Shown piece by piece: positions 49,409 to 63,910 of a stretch of 64,000 nucleotides of DNA. The position numbers and the translations under genes are program-made. The notes under the pieces are model-generated. The model was not told the DNA's origin. It made no database searches and saw only the letters and a list, made by a program, of their open reading frames with translations. The DNA lies in IMG/VR virus record IMGVR_UViG_3300021197_001489, positions 1 to 64,000 of that record. The stretch is one strand, 5' to 3'. The stretch's first letter is position 1. Each line of letters begins with the position of its first letter.

Positions 49409-49484
49409 GCTGGTTTAGCTCAGTTGGTAGAGCAATGGTTTTGTAAACCATAGGTCGGGAGTTCGAGCCTCTCAACCAGCACCA
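49409..49484 (+). tRNA. tRNA-Thr (TGT)
   Basis: 76-nt cloverleaf, anticodon arm ATGGT-TTTGTAA-ACCAT, GTTCGAG T-loop, encoded CCA. Confidence 0.97.
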
Positions 49485-49595
49485 TTTTTTCTGTAAAAAT
49501 ATGCAGTAGTGGCGAGTTCGCTTTTTTTATTTAGAGCGTAACACTCTGATTATCTAACTTGTTCGAACTGCACTTACTGCATACACAATTACTTA

Positions 49596-49624
49596 TTGAC
49601 ATTTAATCGAAATAGTGCTATTAT
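49596..49624 (+). promoter_or_regulatory. sigma70-like promoter
   Basis: TTGACA-17 nt-TATTAT. Confidence 0.6.
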
Positions 49625-49657
49625 AAGTATAGTTTGAATATAGAGAGACTCAAATAA

Positions 49658-49993
49658 ATGGTACAAAAGTTTAATCAAGCAGGCATAGCATGTGTCTGTG
49701 CAGATGCAATGAATCAAGCAATAAGAAAAAGTATGGACCTTCCTCAGGACCAAATGATCAACATACCACCAGACTGGTTCGATGCAAATTGTGCTTGTAC
49801 TAAACTTGCACCAGGGTGGGGAGCAAAAGCAGACTACAATGCATATGATGCACATGCATATTATCAAAGTCTAGTAGAACTAAAAGATGTTTCTGCCAAA
49901 GTAGTAGAACAAATTGCAGGCAAAGAAGCATTAAAAATTTATTGGTCAGAAGTAGAAACTAGACAAAAAAGAATATGGCGCGATTACAAATAA
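49658..49993 (+). CDS. Hypothetical protein
   Basis: 111 aa with CVC/CAC motifs. Confidence 0.55.
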   Translation: MVQKFNQAGIACVCADAMNQAIRKSMDLPQDQMINIPPDWFDANCACTKLAPGWGAKADYNAYDAHAYYQSLVELKDVSAKVVEQIAGKEALKIYWSEVETRQKRIWRDYK

Positions 49994-50227
49994 ATGTTTT
50001 GGAATTTATTGGCAGTTTCCCTTGTGTTCTTTGTACTGATAATTGCAGCGTGTAGTCCAATTGTTGGCACCACTAGTTTAGTACACAGTATAGTAAAAGG
50101 CGATGCCTTTGGCACAGCAACTGGTATCATTGGTCAAATAATATCAACTGTTACGCCCGAAGAACACCCGCCTAAGCAAAAATCAAAAGCAGAGATTATG
50201 GAAGATTTGCGTAACGCTATGAACTAG
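49994..50227 (+). CDS. Small putative lipoprotein
   Basis: Hydrophobic signal ending IAAC. Confidence 0.5.
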   Translation: MFWNLLAVSLVFFVLIIAACSPIVGTTSLVHSIVKGDAFGTATGIIGQIISTVTPEEHPPKQKSKAEIMEDLRNAMN

Positions 50228-50258
50228 GCATATAAGTAAAAAAACAAAGGTAGATAAC

Positions 50259-50465
50259 ATGGCAGCTAAGAAAAACAAAGATTCAAAAGCCTGGATGATA
50301 CCAGAGGGTGAAAAACGTGAAAATGCAACATATCATTTTCTTGCCCGCAAAAGCATAAGCATGATCCGTGAAGGTAAGAAATTGCGTATGCGTAAGTATC
50401 ATCCTAAATTAAAACAACATGTTTGGTTTGTAGAAACAAAGATGCCAAGCCACAGCGCAAAATGA
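50259..50465 (+). CDS. rpmG: Ribosomal protein bL33-like
   Basis: KLRMRKYHPKLKQHVWFVETK matches the bL33 C-terminal KLxxxKYxPxxxxHVxFxExK pattern; N-terminus divergent. Confidence 0.7.
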   Translation: MAAKKNKDSKAWMIPEGEKRENATYHFLARKSISMIREGKKLRMRKYHPKLKQHVWFVETKMPSHSAK

Positions 50466-51145
50466 ATCAATACATATTTGATGTTGACGGCACACTAACG
50501 CCCAGCAGAGAAAAAATTGATCCTGAGTTTGGTGCATGGTTCATTGACTTTTGCAACAACCACAGTGTGTATCTGGTAACAGGCAGTGACCGTCTGAAGA
50601 CCATTGAACAGGTAGGCGAAACAGTGTACAACAGTTGTGTTCGTGTGTATCAGTGTTCAGGAAATGAAGTATTTGAGAAAAACAAACGTATTCGTGTTAG
50701 TGATTGGCAGTTACCCGATGCAGCACAAACCTGGCTACAAGAACAGTTGGACAAAAGTAAATTTTATAGAAAGACTGGCACCCACATTGAACACAGGACT
50801 GGCATGGTTAACTTTAGCATTGTTGGTCGACAAGCCAACATGGAAGAACGAGCAATGTATGTTCAATGGGATGAACACAAACTGGAACGCATGATAATTG
50901 CTGCACAGTTTAACTTTCGCTTTCAAGATCTGCAGGCAACTATTGGTGGCGACACTGGCATTGATATCTATGCTAAAGGCAAAGACAAAGCACAGATTGT
51001 TAAAGACTTTGACCTAACAGATACGCTGTGGTTCTTTGGTGATGCTATGCGTCCAAGCGGCAACGATTACTCACTGAGCAAAGTTGTAAATCATGCAGTG
51101 CCAGTGAAGGATTGGCAAGATACGTGGCGTATATTAAGTGAATAG
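50462..51145 (+). CDS. HAD-IIB phosphomannomutase-like phosphatase
   Basis: FDVDGTLT, VTGSD, IEHRTGMVNFSIVGR, FGDAMRPSGNDY. Confidence 0.8.
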   Translation: MNQYIFDVDGTLTPSREKIDPEFGAWFIDFCNNHSVYLVTGSDRLKTIEQVGETVYNSCVRVYQCSGNEVFEKNKRIRVSDWQLPDAAQTWLQEQLDKSKFYRKTGTHIEHRTGMVNFSIVGRQANMEERAMYVQWDEHKLERMIIAAQFNFRFQDLQATIGGDTGIDIYAKGKDKAQIVKDFDLTDTLWFFGDAMRPSGNDYSLSKVVNHAVPVKDWQDTWRILSE

Positions 51146-51596
51146 TATGAATATTACTGTTACAGGCACTAGTAAAGGATTAGGTAAAAGTATTGCAGAC
51201 TATTGTGAACAATCACACACAGTGGTCAGGTTTGGTCGAGAATATGACTTGCGTGATTACTCCGTGCGGCAAAAAATTATACAACAAGAAAGTGATATTC
51301 TTATTAGTGTAGCAAAACCTAATTTTTCACAAACGGAATTATTGTATGAGTGGTATAATGTACATGGTACTAGTAAGCGGGTGATTAATATTGGAAGTGC
51401 GGTTGTACATAAAGAATTTTGGGGAGATGATATTCACATGATGAGGTATCATACACAAAAACGCAGTCTCGCACATGCTGTGGCTCAAATTGATCATCCA
51501 AACATCTCTATTATAAACCCAGAACACCTCTACAACAAAAATGCATTTGATTATGCTGTATTGGAAAAATGGTGCAAGGAGAATATTTTTATATGA
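51138..51596 (+). CDS. Short-chain dehydrogenase-like protein (short)
   Basis: TGTSKGLG, INIGS, YHTQK (YxxxK). Confidence 0.7.
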   Translation: MNSMNITVTGTSKGLGKSIADYCEQSHTVVRFGREYDLRDYSVRQKIIQQESDILISVAKPNFSQTELLYEWYNVHGTSKRVINIGSAVVHKEFWGDDIHMMRYHTQKRSLAHAVAQIDHPNISIINPEHLYNKNAFDYAVLEKWCKENIFI

Positions 51597-52738
51597 AACC
51601 AAAAGATTTATACGAAAATAGAGTATTTTGCTCAGCACCATGGAACAATTTATATATCAATCCAGATGGAAAAATTCTAACCTGCAGTATAGGAAAATGC
51701 AATGTAGGAAATCTTAGTGATAACAGGATACAGGATATTGTCCAGGACAATGATGTCTTAAAAGAAATTCAACAAAGTATGATAGACGGCAAGCGCCATA
51801 AAAATTGTGGTACTTGCTATAAGCTAGAAGATAGTGGAGTAAGTTACAGTTTAAGAAAGCACTACAAAAGCAAAATTAGTAATTTTAATAATTTAGATCA
51901 GTATGATATTGCTTCAGGCAGTTTAGATGTGACCAGTTTTGATCTAAGATACGACAACACTTGTCAAAATGCATGTGTTTACTGTGGTCCGGCACTAAGC
52001 AGTAGATGGGAAAAAGAACTGGGTGTAACAGTTCCAAAGCCAAGTCTTGGCAATATAGATAATACCAAGAAGTATGTATCAGAAAATCTTGCGAATCTCA
52101 AAGAAATATACCTAGCAGGTGGAGAACCTTTGGTTACCAAAGACTTTGCTGTTATATTAGAAGAGCTGCACAAAGTAAATCCAAATTGCAAAATTAGAAT
52201 TAACAGTAATATTAAAAATATTAATACTCCGGTGTACGAATTAAGCAAAAAGTTTCGTAATCTAAGATATACACTGAGTGCAGAAGCAGTTGAACAGCAA
52301 TTCGAGTACATAAGATATCCGCAAACATGGAGTAGTTTTCAAAAAAATGTTAAACAAGTTATTGATGAAGTCCCTTCATATAACTTTAACATGGCATTAA
52401 ATGTTCTTAACATGTATGGATTATTTGATTGCATAGACTATCTTAGAAGTATAGGAGCACACGATAATAGTTTAATAATTACGCATGTAAACAATCCATC
52501 TTGGTGTAATATTAATAATCTGTCAGATGAATTATTAGATGAATTTGTTGAACGTTGTAACCTGTACATGTCACAAACAGATCCAAAATACAGTCTGTAT
52601 TCAGCATTGGAAGGTTGTGTAAATTTTGTTCGGGTATCTTTCGATAAAAATATCAATGATACAAGATTAAATTTAGAAACATTAGATATAAGAAGAAACT
52701 TAAATAGTAAAAATATTTTTCCATATATTTACAAATAG
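51593..52738 (+). CDS. Radical SAM protein with N-terminal SPASM/twitch-like domain
   Basis: CQNACVYC, AGGEP; N-terminal CSAPW...C...CGTC. Confidence 0.85.
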   Translation: MKPKDLYENRVFCSAPWNNLYINPDGKILTCSIGKCNVGNLSDNRIQDIVQDNDVLKEIQQSMIDGKRHKNCGTCYKLEDSGVSYSLRKHYKSKISNFNNLDQYDIASGSLDVTSFDLRYDNTCQNACVYCGPALSSRWEKELGVTVPKPSLGNIDNTKKYVSENLANLKEIYLAGGEPLVTKDFAVILEELHKVNPNCKIRINSNIKNINTPVYELSKKFRNLRYTLSAEAVEQQFEYIRYPQTWSSFQKNVKQVIDEVPSYNFNMALNVLNMYGLFDCIDYLRSIGAHDNSLIITHVNNPSWCNINNLSDELLDEFVERCNLYMSQTDPKYSLYSALEGCVNFVRVSFDKNINDTRLNLETLDIRRNLNSKNIFPYIYK

Positions 52739-52745
52739 GTATAAA

Positions 52746-52937
52746 ATGTTAAGTAAAAAATGTAAACAGCATCTAGCAGATGTAAATGAAACAGGACTAG
52801 AGCACATGATAGTAGCACTAAAAGTTGCAGTAAAATTGCAATTGTTAGTGCCTGCATTAATTATACACAGCGTTGCTCCACGTTTCTTTACAACTACTGC
52901 CAGTGATACAATGAAGAATATATTAAAAAATAGATAA
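52746..52937 (+). CDS. Small hypothetical protein (DUF6356-like)
   Basis: HL...ET.LEH...IHS..P.FF..TAS pattern. Confidence 0.5.
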   Translation: MLSKKCKQHLADVNETGLEHMIVALKVAVKLQLLVPALIIHSVAPRFFTTTASDTMKNILKNR

Positions 52938-52958
52938 TGTTGGCCGACTGTTAAACAA

Positions 52959-53225
52959 ATGAGCAAATATGATGAAAAACGTATGAAAGAAATCCAAACC
53001 AGATTGGTAAAACACATACAGCAAAACCTTAAAGAAGATGAAGACTATGTGCTGCTTGCGACCATGCTTTTAAAACACAGTATAGTGCTTTATAGAACGT
53101 TCCTAACAGATCAACAGATAGTTAAAATGTTAGCCCGTGCAGGAGAAACAATCAATGACGCCGCGCACGACATTGACAAGTTTATCGACACAGACGAAAC
53201 TGGCAATCCTCCCACAGTACATTAA
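52959..53225 (+). CDS. Hypothetical protein
   Basis: 88-aa helical ORF. Confidence 0.5.
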   Translation: MSKYDEKRMKEIQTRLVKHIQQNLKEDEDYVLLATMLLKHSIVLYRTFLTDQQIVKMLARAGETINDAAHDIDKFIDTDETGNPPTVH

Positions 53226-53235
53226 AAAAAATTGG

Positions 53236-53264
53236 TTGACACATAGCACAATATATTATATACT
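53236..53264 (+). promoter_or_regulatory. sigma70-like promoter for tRNA-Arg
   Basis: TTGACA-17 nt-TATACT, 14 nt before the tRNA. Confidence 0.8.
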
Positions 53265-53278
53265 AATAAGACAATCGC

Positions 53279-53355
53279 GGTTCCATAGCTCAGCTGGATA
53301 GAGCAACTGCCTTCTAAGCAGTAGGTCGGGAGTTCGAATCTTCCTGGAATCGCCA
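53279..53355 (+). tRNA. tRNA-Arg (TCT)
   Basis: 77-nt cloverleaf, ACTGC-CTTCTAA-GCAGT anticodon arm, encoded CCA. Confidence 0.97.
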
Positions 53356-53376
53356 ACTTTAGCAAGGAGTAAGACT

Positions 53377-53613
53377 ATGGAAGTATTACTATTATTTGGA
53401 GCATTAGCAGCAGGTCATCATTACTTGACTCAAGATGAACCAGTTGCACCAGTTGCACCACAAGCTGTACACAGCGCACAATCCATTGGAGAAATTGTAA
53501 ACTTTGGTCACGACGATGTTAGTCTTGCAAGCATTGACTGGAGCAAGGCAGGAAATTCCATTGTTGGCGATTCATCCGAGAATGGAATTCAGTGGATCTT
53601 TATCACAAACTAA
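53377..53613 (+). CDS. Small hypothetical protein
   Basis: AAGGAG RBS; hydrophobic N-terminus. Confidence 0.55.
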   Translation: MEVLLLFGALAAGHHYLTQDEPVAPVAPQAVHSAQSIGEIVNFGHDDVSLASIDWSKAGNSIVGDSSENGIQWIFITN

Positions 53614-53629
53614 TAGAAGGAATAGTAAA

Positions 53630-53854
53630 ATGAAAGTATCAGTAGACGTTTATACCAAAGACATCGAAGCAGGCTTGGCAGCATTTAAACTTGCACTAGA
53701 CAGTGGTGCAACAGATGCACAATTGCGCAGCAACGAAGATTGGGAAACAAAGAAATTCGAAAGTCTCAATCTAATGTTTGAAGCAGACAACAAGAGTGAA
53801 GCTATTAGCAGCCTAGACAACGGTCCGTTCAAACGCGATCAATCAGATCTTTAA
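53630..53854 (+). CDS. Small hypothetical protein
   Basis: AAGGA RBS; MKVSVDVY... Confidence 0.55.
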   Translation: MKVSVDVYTKDIEAGLAAFKLALDSGATDAQLRSNEDWETKKFESLNLMFEADNKSEAISSLDNGPFKRDQSDL

Positions 53855-53998
53855 ATGAAAAAGATCTCAAGTCTAGTTCATAATCCGTTATTTGTTGGAG
53901 CCCTTGGTTTGACAAACCTATTTGCCAGTCAAGGCAACATATGGATGATAATTACAGGATTGGTATTGATTGTAATCGCCGCAATGGATGCATTCTAA
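53855..53998 (+). CDS. Small two-TM membrane peptide (47 aa, not in ORF track)
   Basis: ATG abuts the previous TAA; hydrophobic. Confidence 0.5.
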   Translation: MKKISSLVHNPLFVGALGLTNLFASQGNIWMIITGLVLIVIAAMDAF

Positions 53999-54000
53999 TT

Positions 54001-54074
54001 AGGGGATAAGTGTTACGGTAGCACGACAGGCTCCAACCCTGTAAGCGTGGGTTCGACTCCTACATCCTCTGCCA
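54001..54074 (+). tRNA. tRNA-Trp (CCA)
   Basis: 74-nt cloverleaf, ACAGG-CTCCAAC-CCTGT, G73 plus CCA. Confidence 0.9.
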
Positions 54075-54089
54075 ATTATAGGAAATACC

Positions 54090-54593
54090 ATGTACAAAGT
54101 ATCAGCATATTTCAAGAACCAAACAGTGATAAAATACTTTGTAGATCAGTATGAAGCAATTGATTTTAGAGACACAGTGGATGCTCACTATCCACTGAAA
54201 GTAATTTTTGAAGAAGGAGTTTATCCAATGCATACGTTTATCATTAACTGCTGGAACAGTGTGATGAATTACGAACACAATCCGTTACGTCATATTCCAG
54301 ACATGAATACAAGACACATGATAATGCAGGTGTTAGCCTGGATGTGGTGCATTGTGTTTGGCATCATGGTAGGAAGCTGGACTGTGTTTAGCATCAGTGC
54401 TGTTGCACATGTTGCACTAATTGCTGGTATCTGTATCACAGTTGGCGTGTTTGAAACAGCAAGACGTAAGCCAGATTTTTTTAGATTGCGCTCGGATGGT
54501 TATCATTCTGTAAGTCGCACACGCGGACATATGTGGATCAATGGTAAAAAAGTAGAACTAGATCCAAATGATCCTGGCGGCGAACATGAATAA
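54090..54593 (+). CDS. Membrane protein with probable internal in-frame start at 54228
   Basis: Two TM segments in the C-terminal half; AAGGAG 8 nt before the internal ATG. Confidence 0.6.
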   Translation: MYKVSAYFKNQTVIKYFVDQYEAIDFRDTVDAHYPLKVIFEEGVYPMHTFIINCWNSVMNYEHNPLRHIPDMNTRHMIMQVLAWMWCIVFGIMVGSWTVFSISAVAHVALIAGICITVGVFETARRKPDFFRLRSDGYHSVSRTRGHMWINGKKVELDPNDPGGEHE

Positions 54594-55344
54594 ATGTTTA
54601 ATACTGGGATGTTCGCATGCTAATGGTGCAGAAATGCACAAAGAACCAGGGTTCAACATTGCTCAATATAACTTTGTTGAACAAATCGAATATGGCGCCA
54701 GAAACAGCTATCCTGTATTACTAGCTGAACAGCTTGGTTATGATCCTCTAAATCATTCAATAAGCGGTGGAAGCAATGATGCAATGTACAGAATTGCATC
54801 AGAACAAATCCACAATCTCACTGATCAAGATATTGTTATTGCTTGCTGGACTGGCGTAGATCGCAGCGAGCTTTGGCATCAAGAGCATAGATGCTGGCGT
54901 CCTATTAACTACAACAATAATCAAATACATCAGATTAGTCCCAATGAATACAGCCTTGAAGGCATTAACATAGGCGCTGTAGTTGATCGAAATCAAGATT
55001 ATCATGAATACGCAAAACAATGGATAGTGTTCCAGGGACATTATCAAAGTGGTTATCACAATAAAATAAAAAATGTGCTTGCACTAAACTGTTTAACAAC
55101 CAGTCGTGGTATTCGCACTATTAACCTGGACAGTTTCCAAGGCTTCAACGCAAACCCGGATTTTTCATCCTGGTTTCCCTGGCCTGAAACGGTATATCGT
55201 CCATTTGATGTACACGAAGACGAATTTGTTCCCTTTTGTCTTGGTAAAAATTACCCACACGACCCCAGCGGACACTTTTTCCGTCCTGCACATGAAGCAT
55301 ATAGCAAACATGTTTATAATCATGTCAAAAATTTTGCCGCCTAA
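54586..55344 (+). CDS. SGNH/GDSL-like hydrolase fold protein
   Basis: GCSHANG, GGSNDA, GHF...AH. Confidence 0.55.
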   Translation: MNKCLILGCSHANGAEMHKEPGFNIAQYNFVEQIEYGARNSYPVLLAEQLGYDPLNHSISGGSNDAMYRIASEQIHNLTDQDIVIACWTGVDRSELWHQEHRCWRPINYNNNQIHQISPNEYSLEGINIGAVVDRNQDYHEYAKQWIVFQGHYQSGYHNKIKNVLALNCLTTSRGIRTINLDSFQGFNANPDFSSWFPWPETVYRPFDVHEDEFVPFCLGKNYPHDPSGHFFRPAHEAYSKHVYNHVKNFAA

Positions 55345-55366
55345 GTTGTGCCATATAAATAAAATT

Positions 55367-55468
55367 AGACAGCGCCAACTACGGCGCGGGTAAAACTGGA
55401 CGCTCACTGAAAGTGATTTTAATGTTGTGTAACATTAGACGCCCTGCCCTATGTTAATCTAGTCTCCC
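55367..55468 (+). ncRNA. Candidate structured RNA / 5' leader of tctA
   Basis: TATAAATA at 55354; hairpins GCGCC/GGCGC, TCAC/GTGA, TAATGTT/AACATTA closed by AGAC/GTCT. Confidence 0.4.
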
Positions 55469-55495
55469 AAAAATTAAATGGTTTAAAGGACCGAT

Positions 55496-56830
55496 ATGTT
55501 TGAATTACTTTCTGCTTTTGTTGTAGGATTAGGTTTAGGTGTTGTGTCTGGAATTGTTCCAGGTCTCAATGTGTTTGTAAGTATCTTACTGGTATTTCCA
55601 CTGTTGATAACTTGGGAACCAACCAGCATTATGTTTATGTATATCACATTGGCCAGTGTGCATCAGTACTTTGGCAGTGTAAGTGCCACTGTGTTTGCTA
55701 TACCTGGCACCAGCACCAGTTTACCTGCACTACACGAAGGGCATGGTATGTTTCAAAGTGGCAGAGGCAGCGAAGCAATTATGACAGCCGCAATTGGCAG
55801 TTTCTTTGCTAGTTTTTTTGCTATTGTTCTAATACATTTCATGTTGCCTTATCTCAGCATTTTCTATCAAATTTTTAACACACACATACAGGCATTGCTG
55901 TTAACAGTTGCCGCAGTAACAATCATAGTGTTCGCTGACAACAAAATTTGGATTAGTCTATTGCTTTGGATAGTAGGAAATACACTGGCCATGGTAGGCC
56001 TACACGAATACTATGGCGGCATTACATTTATGACTTTTGGAATTCCGGCACTGTACACAGGTATTGATCTATTACCTGTGATGATTTCACTGTATGTGGT
56101 TCCTGTGTTTTTGAGAGCAAGTAAGTCAGGCGGCCGTATTGAATTTAAAGGTGTAAGCATGGGAGGCTATGTTGATGCCGCGCGCCGCATGTACAAACAA
56201 ATGAAAATGACACTTTTGCGTAGCAGTATTATTGGAGCATTAGTTGGCTTCATACCTGGCATCAGTTGGGGGTTGAGTACAATGCTTGCTTACAACTCCG
56301 AACTGGGTATACGCAAACGTAAAAAACTATACAATACACAGGGAGATGCAAACTGTTTGGTGGCTGCAGAAAGCAGTAACAACGCAGGTGTGTACACCAG
56401 TATGGTGCCTATGCTGTTTGCAGGTATACCTATCACTGCAAGTACTGCACTCATATACAACATATTCATGTTTAGAGGCATCAACCCAACGCTGCCATTC
56501 TTTGAAAGTTTATACGAAATAACCTTAGTTGGGTTTGGCATAAGCAGTGTTATAGGATTGCTTATAGCAGGCAAATATGTTAATTTTCTCAAGTTTTTAA
56601 GTGGACTGGACATACGCAAATTTTACACTGTGATGTTTTTGCTGCTGGTTGTGATTTGCTACTTTGTGGCAGAACAATACTATGCAGGATTTGACAACAT
56701 GATGATGTTGGTTTGTCTGTTACCTTTTGGGTACCTACTTAGAAATTACAACACAATGCCATTGATATATGGTTTTGTGTTGCAAGATATTTTTATAGAA
56801 AGTGTTTATAGACTAACATTTTTCTATTAA
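55496..56830 (+). CDS. Tripartite tricarboxylate transporter TctA-like permease
   Basis: SGIVPGL, IPGTSTS, GALVGFIPG, AAESSNNA, GIPITAS motifs; about 12 TM. Confidence 0.75.
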   Translation: MFELLSAFVVGLGLGVVSGIVPGLNVFVSILLVFPLLITWEPTSIMFMYITLASVHQYFGSVSATVFAIPGTSTSLPALHEGHGMFQSGRGSEAIMTAAIGSFFASFFAIVLIHFMLPYLSIFYQIFNTHIQALLLTVAAVTIIVFADNKIWISLLLWIVGNTLAMVGLHEYYGGITFMTFGIPALYTGIDLLPVMISLYVVPVFLRASKSGGRIEFKGVSMGGYVDAARRMYKQMKMTLLRSSIIGALVGFIPGISWGLSTMLAYNSELGIRKRKKLYNTQGDANCLVAAESSNNAGVYTSMVPMLFAGIPITASTALIYNIFMFRGINPTLPFFESLYEITLVGFGISSVIGLLIAGKYVNFLKFLSGLDIRKFYTVMFLLLVVICYFVAEQYYAGFDNMMMLVCLLPFGYLLRNYNTMPLIYGFVLQDIFIESVYRLTFFY

Positions 56831-60272: not shown

Positions 60273-60722
60273 ATGAGTATGTTTTTAAGGTGGTGGCTAC
60301 TGTTCTGCACCAGTTGTGCGGCTATGTTTACCGCCTATAGTTTTGGGTTTGTTGATGCACTGATTGCAAAAGATGTCACGCGACTTAGTTTTGCTATACT
60401 TGCAGTGTTCTTTTTAAGTAGCATGTATGTTGGATGGATGACCTATAAACGAAGCAAAGGTGCAGTAGTGAAAGTTGGTGTAAATGTTGGATGGTTTATC
60501 ACTGAACTACTGCTTGCCTTGGGCATGATTGGAACAGTTATTGGATTTATCTTGATGCTGGGCGGAAGTTTCGAAAGTTTAAATCTTTCTGATACTGGCA
60601 GCGTAAAGACTGCACTAACTGCTATGGCAATAGGTATGAGTACTGCACTGTATACTACACTCGTAGGAATGGTGTGCAGCCAAATCCTCAAGGTGCAGCT
60701 GGTCAATGTCGAATCCAAATAA
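60273..60722 (+). CDS. MotA/TolQ/ExbB proton-channel family protein
   Basis: LGMIGTVIG and GMSTALYTTLVG TM motifs. Confidence 0.8.
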   Translation: MSMFLRWWLLFCTSCAAMFTAYSFGFVDALIAKDVTRLSFAILAVFFLSSMYVGWMTYKRSKGAVVKVGVNVGWFITELLLALGMIGTVIGFILMLGGSFESLNLSDTGSVKTALTAMAIGMSTALYTTLVGMVCSQILKVQLVNVESK

Positions 60723-61371
60723 TAGATTAAAATACAAAAGCAGTATAGGCTTTACTGATTTACTATTCAATCTTGTTATTGGGTTTGTATACCTTTTTGT
60801 GATTGCATTTATACTGATTAATCCTGTTGCTAAAAAAGGCGATGTAATTAAAAAAGCAGAATACTTGGTTACAATAGAATGGAATCATGAGTACAATGAT
60901 GATATTGATTTGTGGATTAAAGACCCTGCCGGCAACATTGTTAGTTTTTTACAAAAAAGCAAAGGCTTGATGCATTTAGAAAAAGATGATCTAGGTCACA
61001 GCAACGATAGCTATCACAAAGGTGCACAAAAGAAAACACTTTATCTCAACAGAGAAGTTATAACACTGAGAGGCACACTAGAAGGCGAATATCAAGTAAT
61101 GGCACATGTGTACAACAGAAAGTTTACAATGAGAGACGGCGAAGTACGTCAGGACTTGCCAGGTATAATAGAAGTCACAGTAATAAAGATTAATCCTTAT
61201 TTGGAAACTTATTTTGAAAGAGTGCCCTATATTGAAACTGGACAAACATTAAGTTTGGTAAGGTTTACAGTGGGAGAAAAACATAGATATCTTGATCACA
61301 ATAATGATCCAAGTTCTTTTATAACTAAAAAAGGAACCAGCGGTTTGGGGAGGTATAACACAATACCATAA
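60706..61371 (+). CDS. MotB/ExbD-like single-TM partner with beta-sandwich periplasmic domain
   Basis: FTDLLFNL TM with conserved Asp; DIDLW...P and D..G motifs. Confidence 0.55.
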   Translation: MSNPNNRLKYKSSIGFTDLLFNLVIGFVYLFVIAFILINPVAKKGDVIKKAEYLVTIEWNHEYNDDIDLWIKDPAGNIVSFLQKSKGLMHLEKDDLGHSNDSYHKGAQKKTLYLNREVITLRGTLEGEYQVMAHVYNRKFTMRDGEVRQDLPGIIEVTVIKINPYLETYFERVPYIETGQTLSLVRFTVGEKHRYLDHNNDPSSFITKKGTSGLGRYNTIP

Positions 61372-61832
61372 TGTTTGATTTCAACCTACTTCCATTTTTT
61401 GCCAGCATGTTGGTTCTAACACTGATAGTGTTGGGTATTGGTGTGCATTTTTATCGCAATGCACTTGTGATGTTTATAGTGATTCCTGTAGCACTGTTTT
61501 GTGCATTTTCAGGATACAACACTATTACCACAATGCTAGGCTATCCTATTAAACACATTATTCCTGAAGATAGTATGTATCTCAATCATATTGAAAATGG
61601 TGACGGCTCAGAATTGTATGTATGGGTATTAGAACCAGAACGCATGATGCCAAAAAACTACAGTATTCCTGCAACAGACGAAAATAAGAAACAAATGCAA
61701 CGTGCCAAAGGTCGCACAGACAAAGGTATAAACCAACAAATAGGCAAATACAAAAGCGAGCGCAGTGGCGAGCGCAACGAAGGCGACTATATGGTTTATG
61801 ACTTTAGCATTGATCCGCAAGGGTTGAAATAA
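61371..61832 (+). CDS. Two-TM membrane protein, third gene of the module
   Basis: Stop-start coupled; hydrophobic N-terminus. Confidence 0.55.
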   Translation: MFDFNLLPFFASMLVLTLIVLGIGVHFYRNALVMFIVIPVALFCAFSGYNTITTMLGYPIKHIIPEDSMYLNHIENGDGSELYVWVLEPERMMPKNYSIPATDENKKQMQRAKGRTDKGINQQIGKYKSERSGERNEGDYMVYDFSIDPQGLK

Positions 61833-61921
61833 CATATACACTGCCTATTAGCCAATAGTTTTACAAACTTTGTTCTTTTGTGTATAATATTTAAATAGCT
61901 GCATATTCCAAAGGAGAAACT

Positions 61922-62410
61922 ATGCCAACATTTGTATACATGACTGCATGCGATGGATGTGGACATTGCGTCGACATTTGTCCAAGTGACATCATGCACA
62001 TTGATCCAGTAACAAGACGAGCAGTAAACATAGAACCAAACTTTTGCTGGGAGTGCTATTCATGCGTAAAAGCATGTCCACAAAATGCAATTGACGACAG
62101 AGGCTACAGTGACTTTGCGCCTATGAATCACAAGGTCAGAGTATTACGAGAACCAGAAAAAGGCGTTATCAGTTGGCGACTCAAATTCAGAGACGGCAGA
62201 GAAAAACACTTTGAATCACCTATTCGCACAACACCTTGGGGCAGTATACAATGCGCCAGTGAGTACGACGTGCCAGATGCAACACTAAATGACTCACAGC
62301 AACTAGCACATGAACCAGAATACTTACTGGCAGATGGCGGGTTGCGCATGATTAGTAAGAATAAATTTGTTAAATACGAGTACACAGGAGACACACATGC
62401 CACCACGTAA
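61922..62410 (+). CDS. aprB: Adenylylsulfate reductase beta subunit (2x[4Fe-4S] ferredoxin)
   Basis: MPTFVYMT.CDGCGHCVDICPSDIMH...NIEP..CWECYSCVKACP...RGYSDFAP; IRTTPWG. Confidence 0.92.
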   Translation: MPTFVYMTACDGCGHCVDICPSDIMHIDPVTRRAVNIEPNFCWECYSCVKACPQNAIDDRGYSDFAPMNHKVRVLREPEKGVISWRLKFRDGREKHFESPIRTTPWGSIQCASEYDVPDATLNDSQQLAHEPEYLLADGGLRMISKNKFVKYEYTGDTHATT

Positions 62411-63500
62411 TCATAATAACTGGACAGCAACACCCAAGGTTGAATACATCAGCAGCGAATGCTACAATAACTTTGAAGTGTTTGAACAAGAGCAAGAGCA
62501 CATCTTTTCAAAAGTGTGGGTACCAATGTGCCACAAGTCAGAGCTTTCGGAAGCAGGTAGGTTTAGAACAACCAAGATTGCTGGTCAAAATGTTATAGCA
62601 ATTAACAATGGCGACACTATTAAAACATACTTAAATCCTGGAAAGTTCAGTACTCCAGCTGGATCAATGACACGAGTTCAATTCTTAATGGATGACTATA
62701 CTCCATTGCATACTGAAGTCAAACATGGTGGAATGGTATGGACAACGTTGGATTCTAATCCTACACAAAGCGTAGATGAGTGGACAGCAGGTGCATTTGA
62801 TTGTATTGCTGATGCCATTGATACCGAAGAGATGGAAGTATTCCATTACCATAAAGCTGTTATAGATACCAATTATAAACTGTGGCATGATACCAACAGT
62901 GAATTCTATCACGACTTCATGCATTATTTTAATAGAGTGAGTGGCTTCAATGATGAATATTTCGCTAGAAAAAATATCCCTTTTGATAATGGTCACGTTA
63001 ATGTGTCTAGCTTTACTGTTAACTATGAAGAGTATGACGGATTTGAAGATCGCGGGGACTTATCTTTTCCCAATTTGCCGCCCAACCAGTGGTACATGGT
63101 TGACCTCTTCCCAGGATTCAATTTTAACCTCCGCGGGAGTGCATATCGTTCAGACTCGGTGACTCCACTAGGTCCTAACAAAGTTCTTATCGAATTTAGA
63201 GGTTATGGATTACTCAATGATACTCCTGAAGAAAGACAAACACGCATTAAGCACCACAATAGTATATGGGGACCTTTCGGCAGAAACTTGCACGAAGACC
63301 TTATTGGCGTGGCTGGTCAAGGCACTACAATGCGTGAAGGTACAGAATCAAGAAACATACTGCACGGCAGACATGAAAATTCTACAATACATGATGAAGT
63401 TGGAATGAGACATTATTATGAAGCATGGGGTAACATGTTGGGTGTAAGTCCAATGAATCCACTACAAGGACAACTACAAGATGTTAGTAAGGCTGCGTAA
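62397..63500 (+). CDS. Ring-hydroxylating oxygenase alpha subunit, MsmA-like, lacking the Rieske cluster motif
   Basis: FHYHKAV..TNYKLWHDTNSEFYHD.MH, WGPFGRNLHED, TIHDE.GMRH; no CxH...CxxH. Confidence 0.8.
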   Translation: MPPRNHNNWTATPKVEYISSECYNNFEVFEQEQEHIFSKVWVPMCHKSELSEAGRFRTTKIAGQNVIAINNGDTIKTYLNPGKFSTPAGSMTRVQFLMDDYTPLHTEVKHGGMVWTTLDSNPTQSVDEWTAGAFDCIADAIDTEEMEVFHYHKAVIDTNYKLWHDTNSEFYHDFMHYFNRVSGFNDEYFARKNIPFDNGHVNVSSFTVNYEEYDGFEDRGDLSFPNLPPNQWYMVDLFPGFNFNLRGSAYRSDSVTPLGPNKVLIEFRGYGLLNDTPEERQTRIKHHNSIWGPFGRNLHEDLIGVAGQGTTMREGTESRNILHGRHENSTIHDEVGMRHYYEAWGNMLGVSPMNPLQGQLQDVSKAA

Positions 63501-63801: not shown

Positions 63802-63903
63802 TGGCTTTGGGGGGAGGATTCGAACCTCCACGCTTAAATATATTGCAACACATTTAAACAGACCGTAAACAGCGGCCCACGTCTACCATTTCGTCACCCC
63901 AAA
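63802..63903 (-). tRNA. Atypical type II (long variable arm) tRNA, anticodon GTT
   Basis: Acceptor TTTGGGG/CCCCAAA, G73-CCA, D arm ACG-AAATGGTAGA-CGT, anticodon arm GGCCG-CTGTTTA-CGGTC, 31-nt variable hairpin, T arm GGAGG-TTCGAAT-CCTCC; 102 nt. Confidence 0.8.
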
Positions 63904-63910
63904 CTGGTTG

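What the first reader, a model, noticed from the sequence alone, without database searches (positions are those of the whole stretch)
61922..63500. AprB ferredoxin overlapping a Rieske-less methanesulfonate-monooxygenase-like alpha subunit
Seen: aprB (two intact CxxCxxCxxxC motifs) overlaps the next gene by 14 nt, and no aprA is adjacent. The next gene keeps the mononuclear-Fe domain (NYKLWHDTNSEFYHDFMH...NLHED). Its Rieske region, however, reads YLNPGKFSTPAGSMTRVQFLMDDYTPLHTEV, with none of the CxH...CxxH ligands. Established: Rieske oxygenase alpha subunits pass electrons from a [2Fe-2S] cluster to the neighbouring subunit's Fe centre. From memory the C-terminal motifs match MsmA (methanesulfonate monooxygenase). 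Inference: either an undescribed two-component organosulfur oxygenase with AprB as surrogate electron donor, or a subunit that joins or poisons host MsmA trimers. The deletion is clean and in frame, which argues against decay.
Basis: partly seen in the sequence, partly recalled or inferred. Interest (0 to 1): 0.85.

Follow-up and report, generated by a model that had tools for sequence, protein, structure and literature searches.

The report
Phage aprB plus Rieske-less MsmA cassette
A large marine phage carries two sulfur-metabolism genes taken from its likely SAR116 host: an APS-reductase iron-sulfur subunit and the catalytic half of a methanesulfonate-monooxygenase-like enzyme, whose missing Rieske half the host itself encodes in a separate, so far unannotated protein.

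Summary
aprB lies at 61922-62410 and has two CxxCxxCxxxC motifs. It overlaps by 14 nt a 367-aa MsmA-like alpha subunit (62397-63500) that lacks all Rieske ligands. No aprA is nearby.

The Rieske-less "MsmA" is not new. It was reported for SAR116 phage HMO-2011, viromes and the host (PMC4433239), and viral msmA is a listed marine AMG.

Three results appear to be new:
- The aprB->msm' cassette recurs. In 22 of 22 phage-type aprB loci, msm' is the next gene of the pair. The cassette sits in at least 5 backbones, and aprB-less sibling phages use the same promoter.
- Both genes are under strong purifying selection (dN/dS about 0.08-0.10).
- Most SAR116 genomes encode a reciprocal partner. This is an MsmA paralogue with the intact CPH-X26-CMFH Rieske domain but a deleted iron site, fused to a ferredoxin reductase. 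It is followed by a beta subunit, a Rieske ferredoxin and the Rieske-less alpha.

That partner gives an ordinary route for electrons, so AprB is not needed as donor. Phage AprB keeps 75 of 78 AprB-invariant residues and the AprA-clasping tail. It most likely serves host AprA.

The "poison subunit" idea is very unlikely.

The parts
61860..61888 (+). sigma-70-like promoter (TTTACA-17-TATAAT, 11 of 12 matches) of the aprB-msm' unit
   Evidence: The same element sits directly before msm' in the aprB-less sibling phage L072 (alignment A4). This is a consensus match only; function was not tested.
61911..61916 (+). ribosome-binding site (AAGGAG) of aprB
   Evidence: Read from the sequence.
61922..62410 (+). 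aprB: APS (adenylyl-sulfate) reductase beta subunit, 162 aa, with two [4Fe-4S] motifs, the APS-reductase_C domain and the C-terminal tail
   Evidence: TIGR02060 scores 176 bits against a cut-off of 135.65, and PF12139 matches. It aligns over residues 1-135 with A. fulgidus AprB 1JNR_B. It keeps 75 of 78 positions that are invariant in cellular AprB. dN/dS is 0.08. It is 81-86% identical to cellular AprB that sits in aprM-aprB-aprA operons.
62386..62390 (+). ribosome-binding site (AGGAG) of msm', inside the 3' end of aprB
   Evidence: The same ACAGGAGA..ATG leader precedes msm' in aprB-less L072, so the 14-nt overlap comes from aprB reading into the older msm' leader.
62397..63500 (+). msm' (alpha'): Rieske-less, catalytic-only paralogue of the methanesulfonate monooxygenase hydroxylase alpha subunit, 367 aa
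   Evidence: The AF2 model (pTM 0.81) matches Rieske-oxygenase alpha subunits (TPADO, NagG, CntA) at TM 0.65-0.70.
62631..62711 (+). scar of the lost Rieske cluster-binding loops (residues 79-105): 27 residues where canonical MsmA has 71, with no CxH or CxxH
   Evidence: Alignment A1. This is the most relaxed segment: dN/dS is 0.55 for residues 77-107. It lies within the stretch about 62500-62800 where identity to the sibling phage L091 falls to 60-62%.
62871..62927 (+). mononuclear-iron motif NYKLWHDTNSEFYHDFMHY (residues 159-177), including the putative bridging carboxylate E169 and His172/His176
   Evidence: Nearly all positions of this motif, including E169, H172 and H176, are invariant in 36 Rieske-less and canonical sequences. 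The assignment of individual residues as ligands rests on the known D/E-x2-H-x3-4-H motif of Rieske oxygenases and is an inference.
63285..63299 (+). NLHED motif (residues 297-301), the putative carboxylate-ligand region
   Evidence: Invariant in A1 and A3. It is deleted in the host's Rieske-only paralogue (A2).

Best explanation
The two genes form a small auxiliary-metabolic operon with its own promoter and two ribosome-binding sites. Its genes came from the sulfonate/sulfite island of SAR116 (Puniceispirillales) hosts.

msm' encodes alpha', the catalytic-only half of a split MsmA-type Rieske oxygenase. In most SAR116 genomes the other half is alpha*. This is an MsmA paralogue with an intact CPH-X26-CMFH Rieske domain but a deleted iron motif, fused to a ferredoxin-NAD+ reductase. 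It is encoded in the order alpha*-reductase, beta subunit, Rieske ferredoxin, a conserved unknown gene, then alpha'.

Rieske oxygenases pass electrons from the Rieske cluster of one alpha subunit to the iron of the neighbouring alpha through a bridging carboxylate. A mixed alpha*/alpha' (plus beta) assembly would therefore be catalytically complete. The phage copy of alpha' would plug into the host's alpha*/beta/ferredoxin. This would sustain or raise oxidation of methanesulfonate, or a similar small sulfonate, to sulfite plus formaldehyde during infection.

aprB is a true APS-reductase beta subunit. It most likely joins host AprA/AprM, so that the sulfite produced is oxidised to APS and then, through Sat, to sulfate plus ATP. 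It is an optional add-on placed precisely between the msm' promoter and the msm' RBS.

Shown here: gene identities, reciprocal loss, synteny, linkage statistics, selection and host origin. Inferred: the alpha*/alpha' heteromer, the substrate, and AprB pairing with host AprA.
For: (1) Reciprocal degeneration. Alignment A2 and BLASTP show that the SAR116 fusion proteins keep the MsmA Rieske domain, which is near-identical to the canonical one. They lack WHDTNSEFYHDFMHYHNR and the NLHED region, while alpha' shows the opposite pattern. Pfam finds Rieske plus Pyr_redox_2 plus Reductase_C and no PF00848.
(2) Conserved synteny. The order alpha*-reductase / beta / Rieske Fd / unk274 / alpha' is seen in full or in part (as far as the contigs reach) in 15 cellular loci.
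(3) E169 and the His motif are invariant in alpha'. The catalytic domain has dN/dS 0.044.
(4) The host island also holds TauE sulfite exporters and C1-folate genes (PanB-like, FTHFS, FolD). sat/aprM/aprA lie about 9-10 kb away in L109, L110 and L116. PMC8547437 and PMC12262181 report msmA beside dmsABC/soeABC, and aprABM plus sat, in SAR116.
(5) Viral AprB forms one clade (SH-aLRT 93) that is sister (99) to cellular AprB in sat-aprM-aprB-aprA operons. It is up to 86% identical to such AprB. It keeps 75 of 78 invariant positions and the tail that aligns to 1JNR_B.
(6) Close-relative scans of IMG/VR found no MsmA-type Rieske domain and no AprA. tblastn of the window and all fetched viral loci found no beta subunit, Rieske ferredoxin or reductase. 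The phage genes must therefore rely on host partners.
(7) aprB is a clean indel behind a shared promoter.
(8) Contigs from RNA libraries cover aprB and msm', and one of them spans the junction.
Against: There is no biochemical evidence for an alpha*/alpha' complex or for any substrate. Two SAR116 loci (L114, L116) have alpha' without alpha* or beta within 10 kb. A trimeric ring of mixed subunits would have fewer active sites than a canonical enzyme. Why a phage would gain from AprB alone, without AprA, is unexplained; replacement of a labile Fe-S subunit is a guess. aprB was never found in phages without msm' (22 of 22), and a purely pathway-level link does not obviously predict that. Only the first 73.5 kb of the 316-kb contig could be inspected. 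The RNA-library evidence is at 90-95% identity, comes from assembled contigs, and could include DNA carry-over.
Confidence: 0.55

Rival explanations
1. First reader's reading A. AprB replaces the lost Rieske centre. It docks on alpha' and feeds electrons to the mononuclear iron, forming a new two-component organosulfur oxygenase.
For: The linkage is strict and one-way. In all 20 IMG/VR aprB loci that extend far enough, and in 2 further metagenome loci, msm' follows aprB. The two genes share a promoter and overlap by 14 nt. No aprA was found in the window, the fetched phage loci or a close-relative scan of IMG/VR. One substitution in the AprB tail, P142R, is fixed in all viral copies.
Against: Most msm' phages lack aprB: 59 unique loci with enough upstream sequence, plus HMO-2011 and the relative that is 96% identical. 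aprB-less siblings share the same backbone and promoter. In L083 two spanin-like genes separate the pair. In cells aprB is always followed by aprA (66 loci) and is never adjacent to msm'. AprB keeps the AprA-clasping tail and 75 of 78 invariant sites. The host supplies a Rieske partner.
Confidence: 0.1
2. alpha' needs no alpha*. The small Rieske ferredoxin (133 aa) or another host carrier reduces its iron site directly, docking where the Rieske domain used to be. alpha* would then be only a reductase with an extra cluster.
For: A Rieske ferredoxin gene is conserved in the operon. L114 and L116 have alpha' without alpha* nearby. The scar region is variable, as if it had been freed from intramolecular constraints.
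Against: alpha* keeps about 400 residues of alpha-subunit fold, including conserved core motifs of the catalytic domain (FPGF, TPL, RGL, EW.RWM). That is hard to explain if only a cluster were needed. The pattern of loss is exactly complementary between the two paralogues.
Confidence: 0.15
3. First reader's reading B. The phage protein is a dominant-negative subunit that joins and poisons host MsmA trimers.
For: It retains the parts of the fold that could mediate oligomerisation but lacks a cluster.
Against: The same Rieske-less protein is a conserved chromosomal gene of SAR116. The iron motif is nearly invariant, and all its putative ligand residues are fully so; the catalytic domain has dN/dS 0.044. 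A poison subunit would not need an intact active site.
Confidence: 0.03
4. The adjacency is historical only. aprB was captured once next to msm' and hitch-hikes, with no functional relation between the two and perhaps no function of its own.
For: Viral AprB is consistent with a single capture. aprB has been lost or gained repeatedly.
Against: aprB is under strong purifying selection: dN/dS is 0.08 overall and 0.027 in the Fe-S core. The pair is kept in at least 5 backbones despite recombination inside msm'. Both genes belong to one host pathway island.
Confidence: 0.12

Closest known systems
MsmA-annotated gene of Puniceispirillum (SAR116) phage HMO-2011, gp61 (Kang et al. 2013, as cited in PMC4433239 and PMC4928673), and the viral msmA AMG family (bioRxiv 10.1101/2021.01.05.425418)
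   Same: It belongs to the same Rieske-less clade: about 71% identity at both nucleotide and protein level, and the deepest branch of the clade. It has the same PF00848-only architecture. The absence of the Cys/His ligands is already noted in the literature, and dN/dS below 1 has already been reported.
   Different: HMO-2011 and most relatives have no aprB upstream. The window's copy sits in a 316-kb contig with a T4-like DNA polymerase and is a mosaic of two allele types.
Canonical methanesulfonate monooxygenase hydroxylase MsmA (Methylosulfonomonas, Filomicrobium, Hyphomicrobium, Hansschlegelia; msmABCD)
   Same: It is 53-59% identical over the whole length. The catalytic domain is very similar and the iron motifs are identical. 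A beta subunit and a Rieske-type ferredoxin are encoded in the host locus.
   Different: It lacks the defining CXH-X26-CXXH Rieske motif through a net loss of 44 aa. In the host, the Rieske function resides in a separate paralogue fused to a reductase. The substrate has not been tested.
AprB of the AprBA/AprM-Sat sulfite-oxidising pathway (structure 1JNR, Archaeoglobus fulgidus; SAR116 sat-aprM-aprB-aprA operon)
   Same: It scores above the TIGR02060 cut-off, has both [4Fe-4S] motifs and the APS-reductase_C domain and tail, and is 81-86% identical to SAR116-type AprB.
   Different: It is encoded without aprA, aprM or sat and is always followed by msm'. The tail carries the fixed substitution P142R. 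The C-terminal end reads into the msm' leader.
Single-subunit phage AMGs that rely on host partners (cyanophage psbA, SUP05 phage dsrC/rdsrA; own knowledge and PMC4928673)
   Same: One subunit of a multi-subunit host redox enzyme is carried by the phage, is under purifying selection, and is host-derived.
   Different: Here two such orphan subunits from two consecutive steps of one pathway are joined in one transcription unit.
Intersubunit electron transfer in alpha3 Rieske oxygenases, e.g. carnitine monooxygenase CntA (PMC7948474; PDB 6Y8J)
   Same: It has the same fold (TM about 0.66) and a conserved carboxylate three residues before the first iron-binding His.
   Different: In known enzymes every alpha subunit carries both centres. 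Here the two centres appear to be divided between two paralogous polypeptides.

Membership tests
AprB (adenylyl-sulfate reductase beta subunit, TIGR02060) | Two CxxCxxCxxxC [4Fe-4S] binding motifs | tested here: met
   C10/13/16/20 and C42/45/48/52. Several Fer4 Pfam families match.
AprB (adenylyl-sulfate reductase beta subunit, TIGR02060) | APS-reductase C-terminal domain and AprA-wrapping tail, with the family HMM above the curated cut-off | tested here: met
   PF12139 at 1.2e-24. TIGR02060 at 176.3 bits against a cut-off of 135.65. Residues 1-135 align to 1JNR_B, including RTTPWGSI and LA.EPE. 75 of 78 cell-invariant sites are kept.
AprB (adenylyl-sulfate reductase beta subunit, TIGR02060) | Encoded next to aprA and functioning as the AprBA heterodimer | tested here: not met
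   No aprA in the window, in the 10 kb beyond it, or in any phage locus. Cellular relatives always have aprA next. Pairing with host AprA was not testable here.
Rieske non-heme iron oxygenase alpha subunit | N-terminal Rieske [2Fe-2S] domain with CxH...CxxH ligands | tested here: not met
   No PF00355 hit. The ligand-bearing loops are deleted. Only the flanking strands of the domain remain.
Rieske non-heme iron oxygenase alpha subunit | C-terminal catalytic domain (PF00848) with a 2-His-1-carboxylate iron site and a bridging carboxylate | tested here: met
   PF00848 at 28.7 bits against a cut-off of 24.9. E169, H172, H176 and the NLHED motif are invariant. Fold match at TM 0.65-0.70. Metal binding itself was not tested.
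MsmA (methanesulfonate monooxygenase hydroxylase alpha) | Rieske motif with the 26-residue spacer, CXH-X26-CXXH (PMC4433239) | tested here: not met
   Absent from the window protein. Present in canonical relatives and in the host's alpha* fusion protein.
MsmA (methanesulfonate monooxygenase hydroxylase alpha) | Closest characterised relatives are MsmA | tested here: met
   53-59% identity over the full length to MsmA of Filomicrobium, Hyphomicrobium and Hansschlegelia. The two groups are sister clades with 100% support.
MsmA (methanesulfonate monooxygenase hydroxylase alpha) | Oxidises methanesulfonate to formaldehyde plus sulfite, together with MsmB, MsmC and MsmD | not testable with these tools
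   The host locus has a beta subunit, a Rieske ferredoxin, a reductase, TauE and C1-folate genes. This is consistent with the activity but is not an assay.
Phage auxiliary metabolic gene | Lies inside a phage genome, has a close host homologue, and is under purifying selection | tested here: met
   The contig is an IMG/VR UViG with a T4-like DNA polymerase. SAR116 homologues are 78-86% identical. dN/dS is 0.08-0.10.

The most novel reading that the evidence does not exclude
Two linked novel readings remain open.

(a) SAR116 and its phages use a 'split' Rieske oxygenase, made by reciprocal degeneration of duplicated msmA genes. One paralogue keeps only the Rieske centre and is fused to its reductase. 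The other keeps only the iron site. Catalysis would require a heteromer. The catalytic half is among the widespread phage AMGs of the surface ocean.

(b) The bolder reading is that phage AprB wires host AprA to alpha'. The two electrons released when the product sulfite is oxidised to APS would then be returned to the monooxygenase, closing a loop that spares NADH: sulfonate + O2 + AMP -> formaldehyde + APS + H2O.
Probability: 0.4. Interest if true: 0.8.

Novelty: new variant of a known kind. Interest (0 to 1): 0.6.

Why it matters
Phage "msmA" has been counted as a marine sulfur-cycle AMG since 2013. Whether a Rieske-less protein can work at all has been left open (PMC4433239).

The host-encoded Rieske-only partner gives a concrete, testable answer. 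It would be the first Rieske oxygenase whose two redox centres sit on different paralogous chains. If that is confirmed, gene-count surveys of "msmA" should score the alpha*/alpha' pair rather than alpha' alone. Phage-driven sulfonate-to-sulfite flux in SAR116 would also become measurable.

The aprB add-on extends the known set of sulfur AMGs to the APS-reductase step. It links an organosulfur and an inorganic sulfur step in one phage transcription unit.

Tried and rejected
- Kang et al. 2013 (PMC3725092) is not held in the library, so its statements are cited only through PMC4433239 and PMC4928673.
- PHROGs gave no family for msm' and only weak ferredoxin hits for aprB.
- The exact-sequence look-up of the L110 protein found nothing.
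- Searches for aprA, aprM, sat, the alpha* fusion, the beta subunit, the Rieske ferredoxin and unk274 in the window and in all viral loci were negative. IMG/VR scans with the MsmA Rieske domain and with SAR116 AprA found no intact Rieske domain and no AprA. These scans use exact peptide words, so distant relatives could be missed.
- The idea that aprB-linked msm' genes form one clade was rejected. They are scattered on the tree, needing at least 6-8 changes.
- The idea that the 14-nt overlap reflects obligatory translational coupling was rejected for two reasons. In L083 the genes are 691 nt apart with two spanin-like ORFs between them. The overlap is explained by aprB reading into the pre-existing msm' leader.
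- No intrinsic terminator was found after msm'.
- A literature search for a described MsmA-reductase fusion or a split Rieske oxygenase found nothing relevant. This is absence of evidence within the held library only.
Full report
**What is there**

The window is the first 64 kb of a 316-kb IMG/VR contig, IMGVR_UViG_3300021197_001489. A near-identical contig of 316,126 bp exists as GCA_900491975.1 UEXM01000006.1. The window encodes a T4-like DNA polymerase, an ATP-dependent protease and three tRNAs, so it belongs to a large phage.

At 61922-62410 lies a 162-aa ORF that is a bona fide AprB:
- TIGR02060 scores 176 bits against a cut-off of 135.65.
- PF12139 matches.
- Both CxxCxxCxxxC motifs are present.

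Its last 14 nt overlap the ATG at 62397 of a 367-aa ORF ending at 63500. That protein hits only the catalytic domain of ring-hydroxylating alpha subunits (PF00848). Its N-terminus still aligns to the first strands of Rieske domains, but the cluster-binding loops are gone.

Canonical MsmA reads NVCPH-X26-CMFH. Against it, 71 residues are replaced by 27, with no CxH or CxxH. The iron motif NYKLWHDTNSEFYHDFMHY and NLHED are identical (A1). No aprA, aprM or sat occurs in the window or in the next 10 kb.

**What was already known**

Nucleotide search hits only Puniceispirillum (SAR116) phage HMO-2011, at its gene gp61, which is annotated as methanesulfonate monooxygenase.

[quoted passage not shown] They also report this for one of the two paralogues of its host IMCC1322. 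They restrict true MsmA to sequences with the 26-residue spacer.

Viral msmA is listed as a marine-only AMG with dN/dS below 1, and that paper does not mention aprB (10.1101/2021.01.05.425418). So the Rieske-less alpha subunit is neither undescribed nor a peculiarity of this assembly. It forms more than 1,200 protein clusters at 90% identity. More than 600 IMG/VR stretches encode relatives of it; the 80 best were examined and are of the short form.

**Origin and evolution of msm'**

A scan of 185,579 species genomes finds the short form (about 361 aa, 78-81% identical) in SAR116/Puniceispirillum genomes. It finds the canonical form (about 405 aa, 53-59% identical) in Hyphomicrobiaceae, Filomicrobium, Hansschlegelia and others.

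On a maximum-likelihood tree the Rieske-less sequences are one clade (support 100). HMO-2011 is the deepest branch, SAR116 cells form one sub-clade (98), and the other phage sequences fall into two large groups. The deletion therefore happened once and is old.

Pairwise NG86 dN/dS among phage copies:

| Region | dN/dS |
|---|---|
| Whole gene | 0.095 |
| Catalytic domain | 0.044 |
| Retained N-terminal part | 0.21 |
| Scar, residues 77-107 | 0.55 |

dS is near saturation, so these values are approximate.

An AF2 model (pTM 0.81) matches full-length Rieske-oxygenase alpha subunits at TM 0.65-0.70.

**The aprB linkage**

Twenty-one IMG/VR contigs encode close relatives of this AprB. In all 20 that extend far enough, msm' follows. 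In 19 of them the gap is -10 to +17 nt in tblastn coordinates. In one (L083) the gap is 691 nt and holds two spanin-like ORFs.

In a metagenome scan, aprB is followed either by aprA or by msm':
- aprA follows in 66 loci, nearly all with aprM upstream.
- msm' follows in 2 loci.
- No mixed arrangements were found.

The reverse does not hold. Only 7 of the 80 best msm' phage loci have aprB. The closest relative of the window's msm' (96% identical, L002) and HMO-2011 have none.

aprB-linked msm' genes are scattered over the tree. The cassette occurs in at least five unrelated flank contexts, and three of these also have aprB-less siblings.

Aligning the window with such a sibling (L072) shows the same upstream gene, the same TTTACA-17-TATAAT promoter and the same ACAGGAGA..ATG msm' leader. 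aprB is a precise indel between promoter and leader, and the 14-nt overlap arises because aprB reads into that leader.

The window's msm' is itself a mosaic:
- In 62350-62950 it is about 90-93% identical to L002, and in 62500-62800 it is only 60-62% identical to its backbone sibling L091.
- In 63100-63400 it is closer to L091.

**What kind of AprB**

Viral AprB sequences form one clade (93) that is sister (99) to cellular AprB encoded in sat-aprM-aprB-aprA operons. The AprA in those operons is 91% identical to that of SAR116 SAG AG-912-K11. The closest cellular AprB proteins are 81-86% identical to the phage protein.

Other properties of the phage protein:
- It aligns end to end with the crystallised A. 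fulgidus AprB, including the tail.
- It keeps 75 of the 78 positions that are at least 95% invariant in 110 mostly cellular AprB sequences. The only fixed change is P142R.
- dN/dS is 0.08 overall, 0.027 in the Fe-S core and 0.15-0.20 in the C-terminal domain and tail.

This is the profile of an AprB that still binds AprA. It is not the profile of a ferredoxin recruited to a new partner.

**The host context supplies the missing half**

In SAR116 locus L109 the gene order is as follows:
1. An 815-aa protein.
2. A beta subunit (Ring_hydroxyl_B).
3. A 133-aa Rieske ferredoxin.
4. A conserved unknown protein (unk274).
5. msm'.
6. LysR.
7. TauE.
8. A PanB-like gene.
9. FTHFS.
10. Two FolD genes.
11. 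A second TauE.
12. aprA, at the edge of the locus.

The N-terminal 400 residues of the 815-aa protein are 49% identical to canonical MsmA. They carry the hallmark CPH-X26-CMFH Rieske domain almost unchanged. The WHDTNSEFYHDFMHYHNR iron motif and the NLHED region are deleted. The C-terminal 400 residues are a ferredoxin-NAD+ reductase.

This arrangement is seen in full or in part (as far as the contigs reach) in 15 cellular loci. Some of these have a DmsABC/SoeABC-like complex inserted. The fusion family has about 38 clusters. The only names its sources give it are generic, such as "FAD-dependent oxidoreductase", and it carries no PF00848 hit. I found no description of it in the literature.

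The duplicated msmA genes have thus degenerated reciprocally. alpha* keeps the Rieske centre, and alpha' keeps the iron site. Electron transfer in Rieske oxygenases runs between neighbouring alpha subunits through a bridging carboxylate (established knowledge; see also PMC7948474). That carboxylate, E169, is invariant in alpha'. A mixed assembly would therefore be complete.

No beta subunit, Rieske ferredoxin or reductase was found in the window or in any fetched viral locus. Close-relative scans of IMG/VR found no MsmA-type Rieske domain and no AprA. The phage genes must therefore work with host parts.

One caveat applies. Two SAR116 loci (L114, L116) have alpha' in a cellular context without alpha* or beta within 10 kb.

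**Pathway logic**

In SAR116, msm', sulfite exporters, C1-folate enzymes and sat-aprMBA lie within about 20 kb of each other. Published surveys place msmA, dmsABC/soeABC and aprABM-sat in the same SAR116 lineages. In some soil Alphaproteobacteria, canonical msmA also lies within 10 kb of aprM/aprB/aprA.

The phage pair therefore joins the sulfite-producing step and the sulfite-oxidising step of one host island. Contigs from RNA libraries cover aprB and msm' but not the flanks, and one 1,046-nt contig spans the junction. This is suggestive only, because the matches are at 90-95% identity, come from assembled contigs, and could include DNA.

**Verdict**

The finding is real.
- The Rieske-less alpha subunit is already known.
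- The aprB cassette and, above all, the host's reciprocal Rieske-only partner appear to be new. They give the most economical mechanism.
- "AprB as surrogate donor" cannot be excluded, because aprB is never seen in phages without msm'. It is disfavoured.
- The "poison subunit" idea is very unlikely.

Noticed in passing
L109:5243-7690 (also L108, L110, L111, L115, L118-L121, L123, L128; cut off at the locus edge in L008, L117 and L127): SAR116 genomes encode a fusion protein of about 800 aa. It is an MsmA-like alpha subunit with an intact CPH-X26-CMFH Rieske domain but deleted iron motifs, joined to a ferredoxin-NAD+ reductase. Public sources name it only generically, for example 'FAD-dependent oxidoreductase'. 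It is the reciprocal of the phage's Rieske-less alpha subunit.
   Followed up: yes
window 62350-63500: The window's msm' is a recombinant. Its 5' part is about 90-93% identical to the aprB-less phage L002. At 62500-62800 it is only 60-62% identical to its own backbone sibling L091. The 3' part is closer to L091. The vestigial Rieske domain therefore exists as divergent allele types that move between phages.
   Followed up: partly
L083:3379-4138: In one phage, two spanin-like ORFs lie between aprB and msm'. One is 177 aa with an apparent N-terminal hydrophobic stretch (by eye, not computed). The other is 133 aa with a lipobox-like LTGCS. The pair therefore does not need to overlap.
   Followed up: partly
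window 62345-62347 (AprB residue 142): Pro142 is at least 95% conserved in cellular AprB tails (motif LP). It is Arg in all 20 viral AprB sequences. This is the only fixed difference at an invariant site.
   Followed up: no
window 63803-63905, minus strand: A tRNA-like cloverleaf with a 7-bp acceptor stem, a GGTTCGAATCC T-arm, a long 12-bp extra arm and the anticodon-loop sequence CUGUUUA. ARAGORN and Rfam do not call it, and the fold z-score is only -1.5. It lies directly beside a class-II aminoacyl-tRNA-synthetase-like gene (PF00152, 282 aa) whose 3' end starts at about 63911 on the minus strand.
   Followed up: partly
window 60273-61832: Three small + strand genes lie immediately upstream of aprB. 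They encode a MotA/ExbB-like protein (149 aa, weak PF01618 hit), a 221-aa protein and a 153-aa protein. This looks like an ExbB/ExbD-style membrane module in a phage. The 153-aa gene is conserved in sibling phages.
   Followed up: no
window 49409-56830 and L188 (contig 52397-73500): The region is dense in unusual auxiliary genes. It holds three tRNAs (Thr, Arg, Trp), a radical-SAM/SPASM protein, DUF6356 and a TctA transporter subunit. Downstream there is an AMP-binding enzyme, a phosphopantetheinyl transferase (ACPS), an AAA protein and an Smr domain. The smaller aprB-less relative L002 shares DUF6356, TctA and AMP-binding genes in a different order.
   Followed up: no
L109:8921-9745 (unk274): A protein of about 270 aa without any Pfam or NCBIfam hit is conserved between the Rieske ferredoxin gene and msm' in SAR116. 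tblastn also finds it in about 24 canonical msmA loci. It is an uncharacterised member of msm clusters.
   Followed up: no
L164, L175-L177, L183 (soil Alphaproteobacteria, Pseudolabrys): Canonical msmA lies within 10 kb of aprM/aprB/aprA in these loci. Genomic proximity of msm and apr genes is therefore not confined to SAR116.
   Followed up: partly
L120-L122, L124-L126, L129 (MAG contigs labelled Planktomarina, Rhodobacteraceae, Verrucomicrobiales, Endobugula, Rickettsiales, Hellea, Legionellales): Several 'genome' contigs carrying msm' look mis-assigned. In L122, L124, L125 and L126 the msm' gene groups with phage sequences on the tree. L129 has the same length as IMG/VR contig L103, an identical msm' sequence, and carries aprB-msm'. 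These are probably phage contigs binned into MAGs. L120 and L121 carry SAR116-type cellular loci and are probably SAR116 contigs binned into the wrong MAG.
   Followed up: partly
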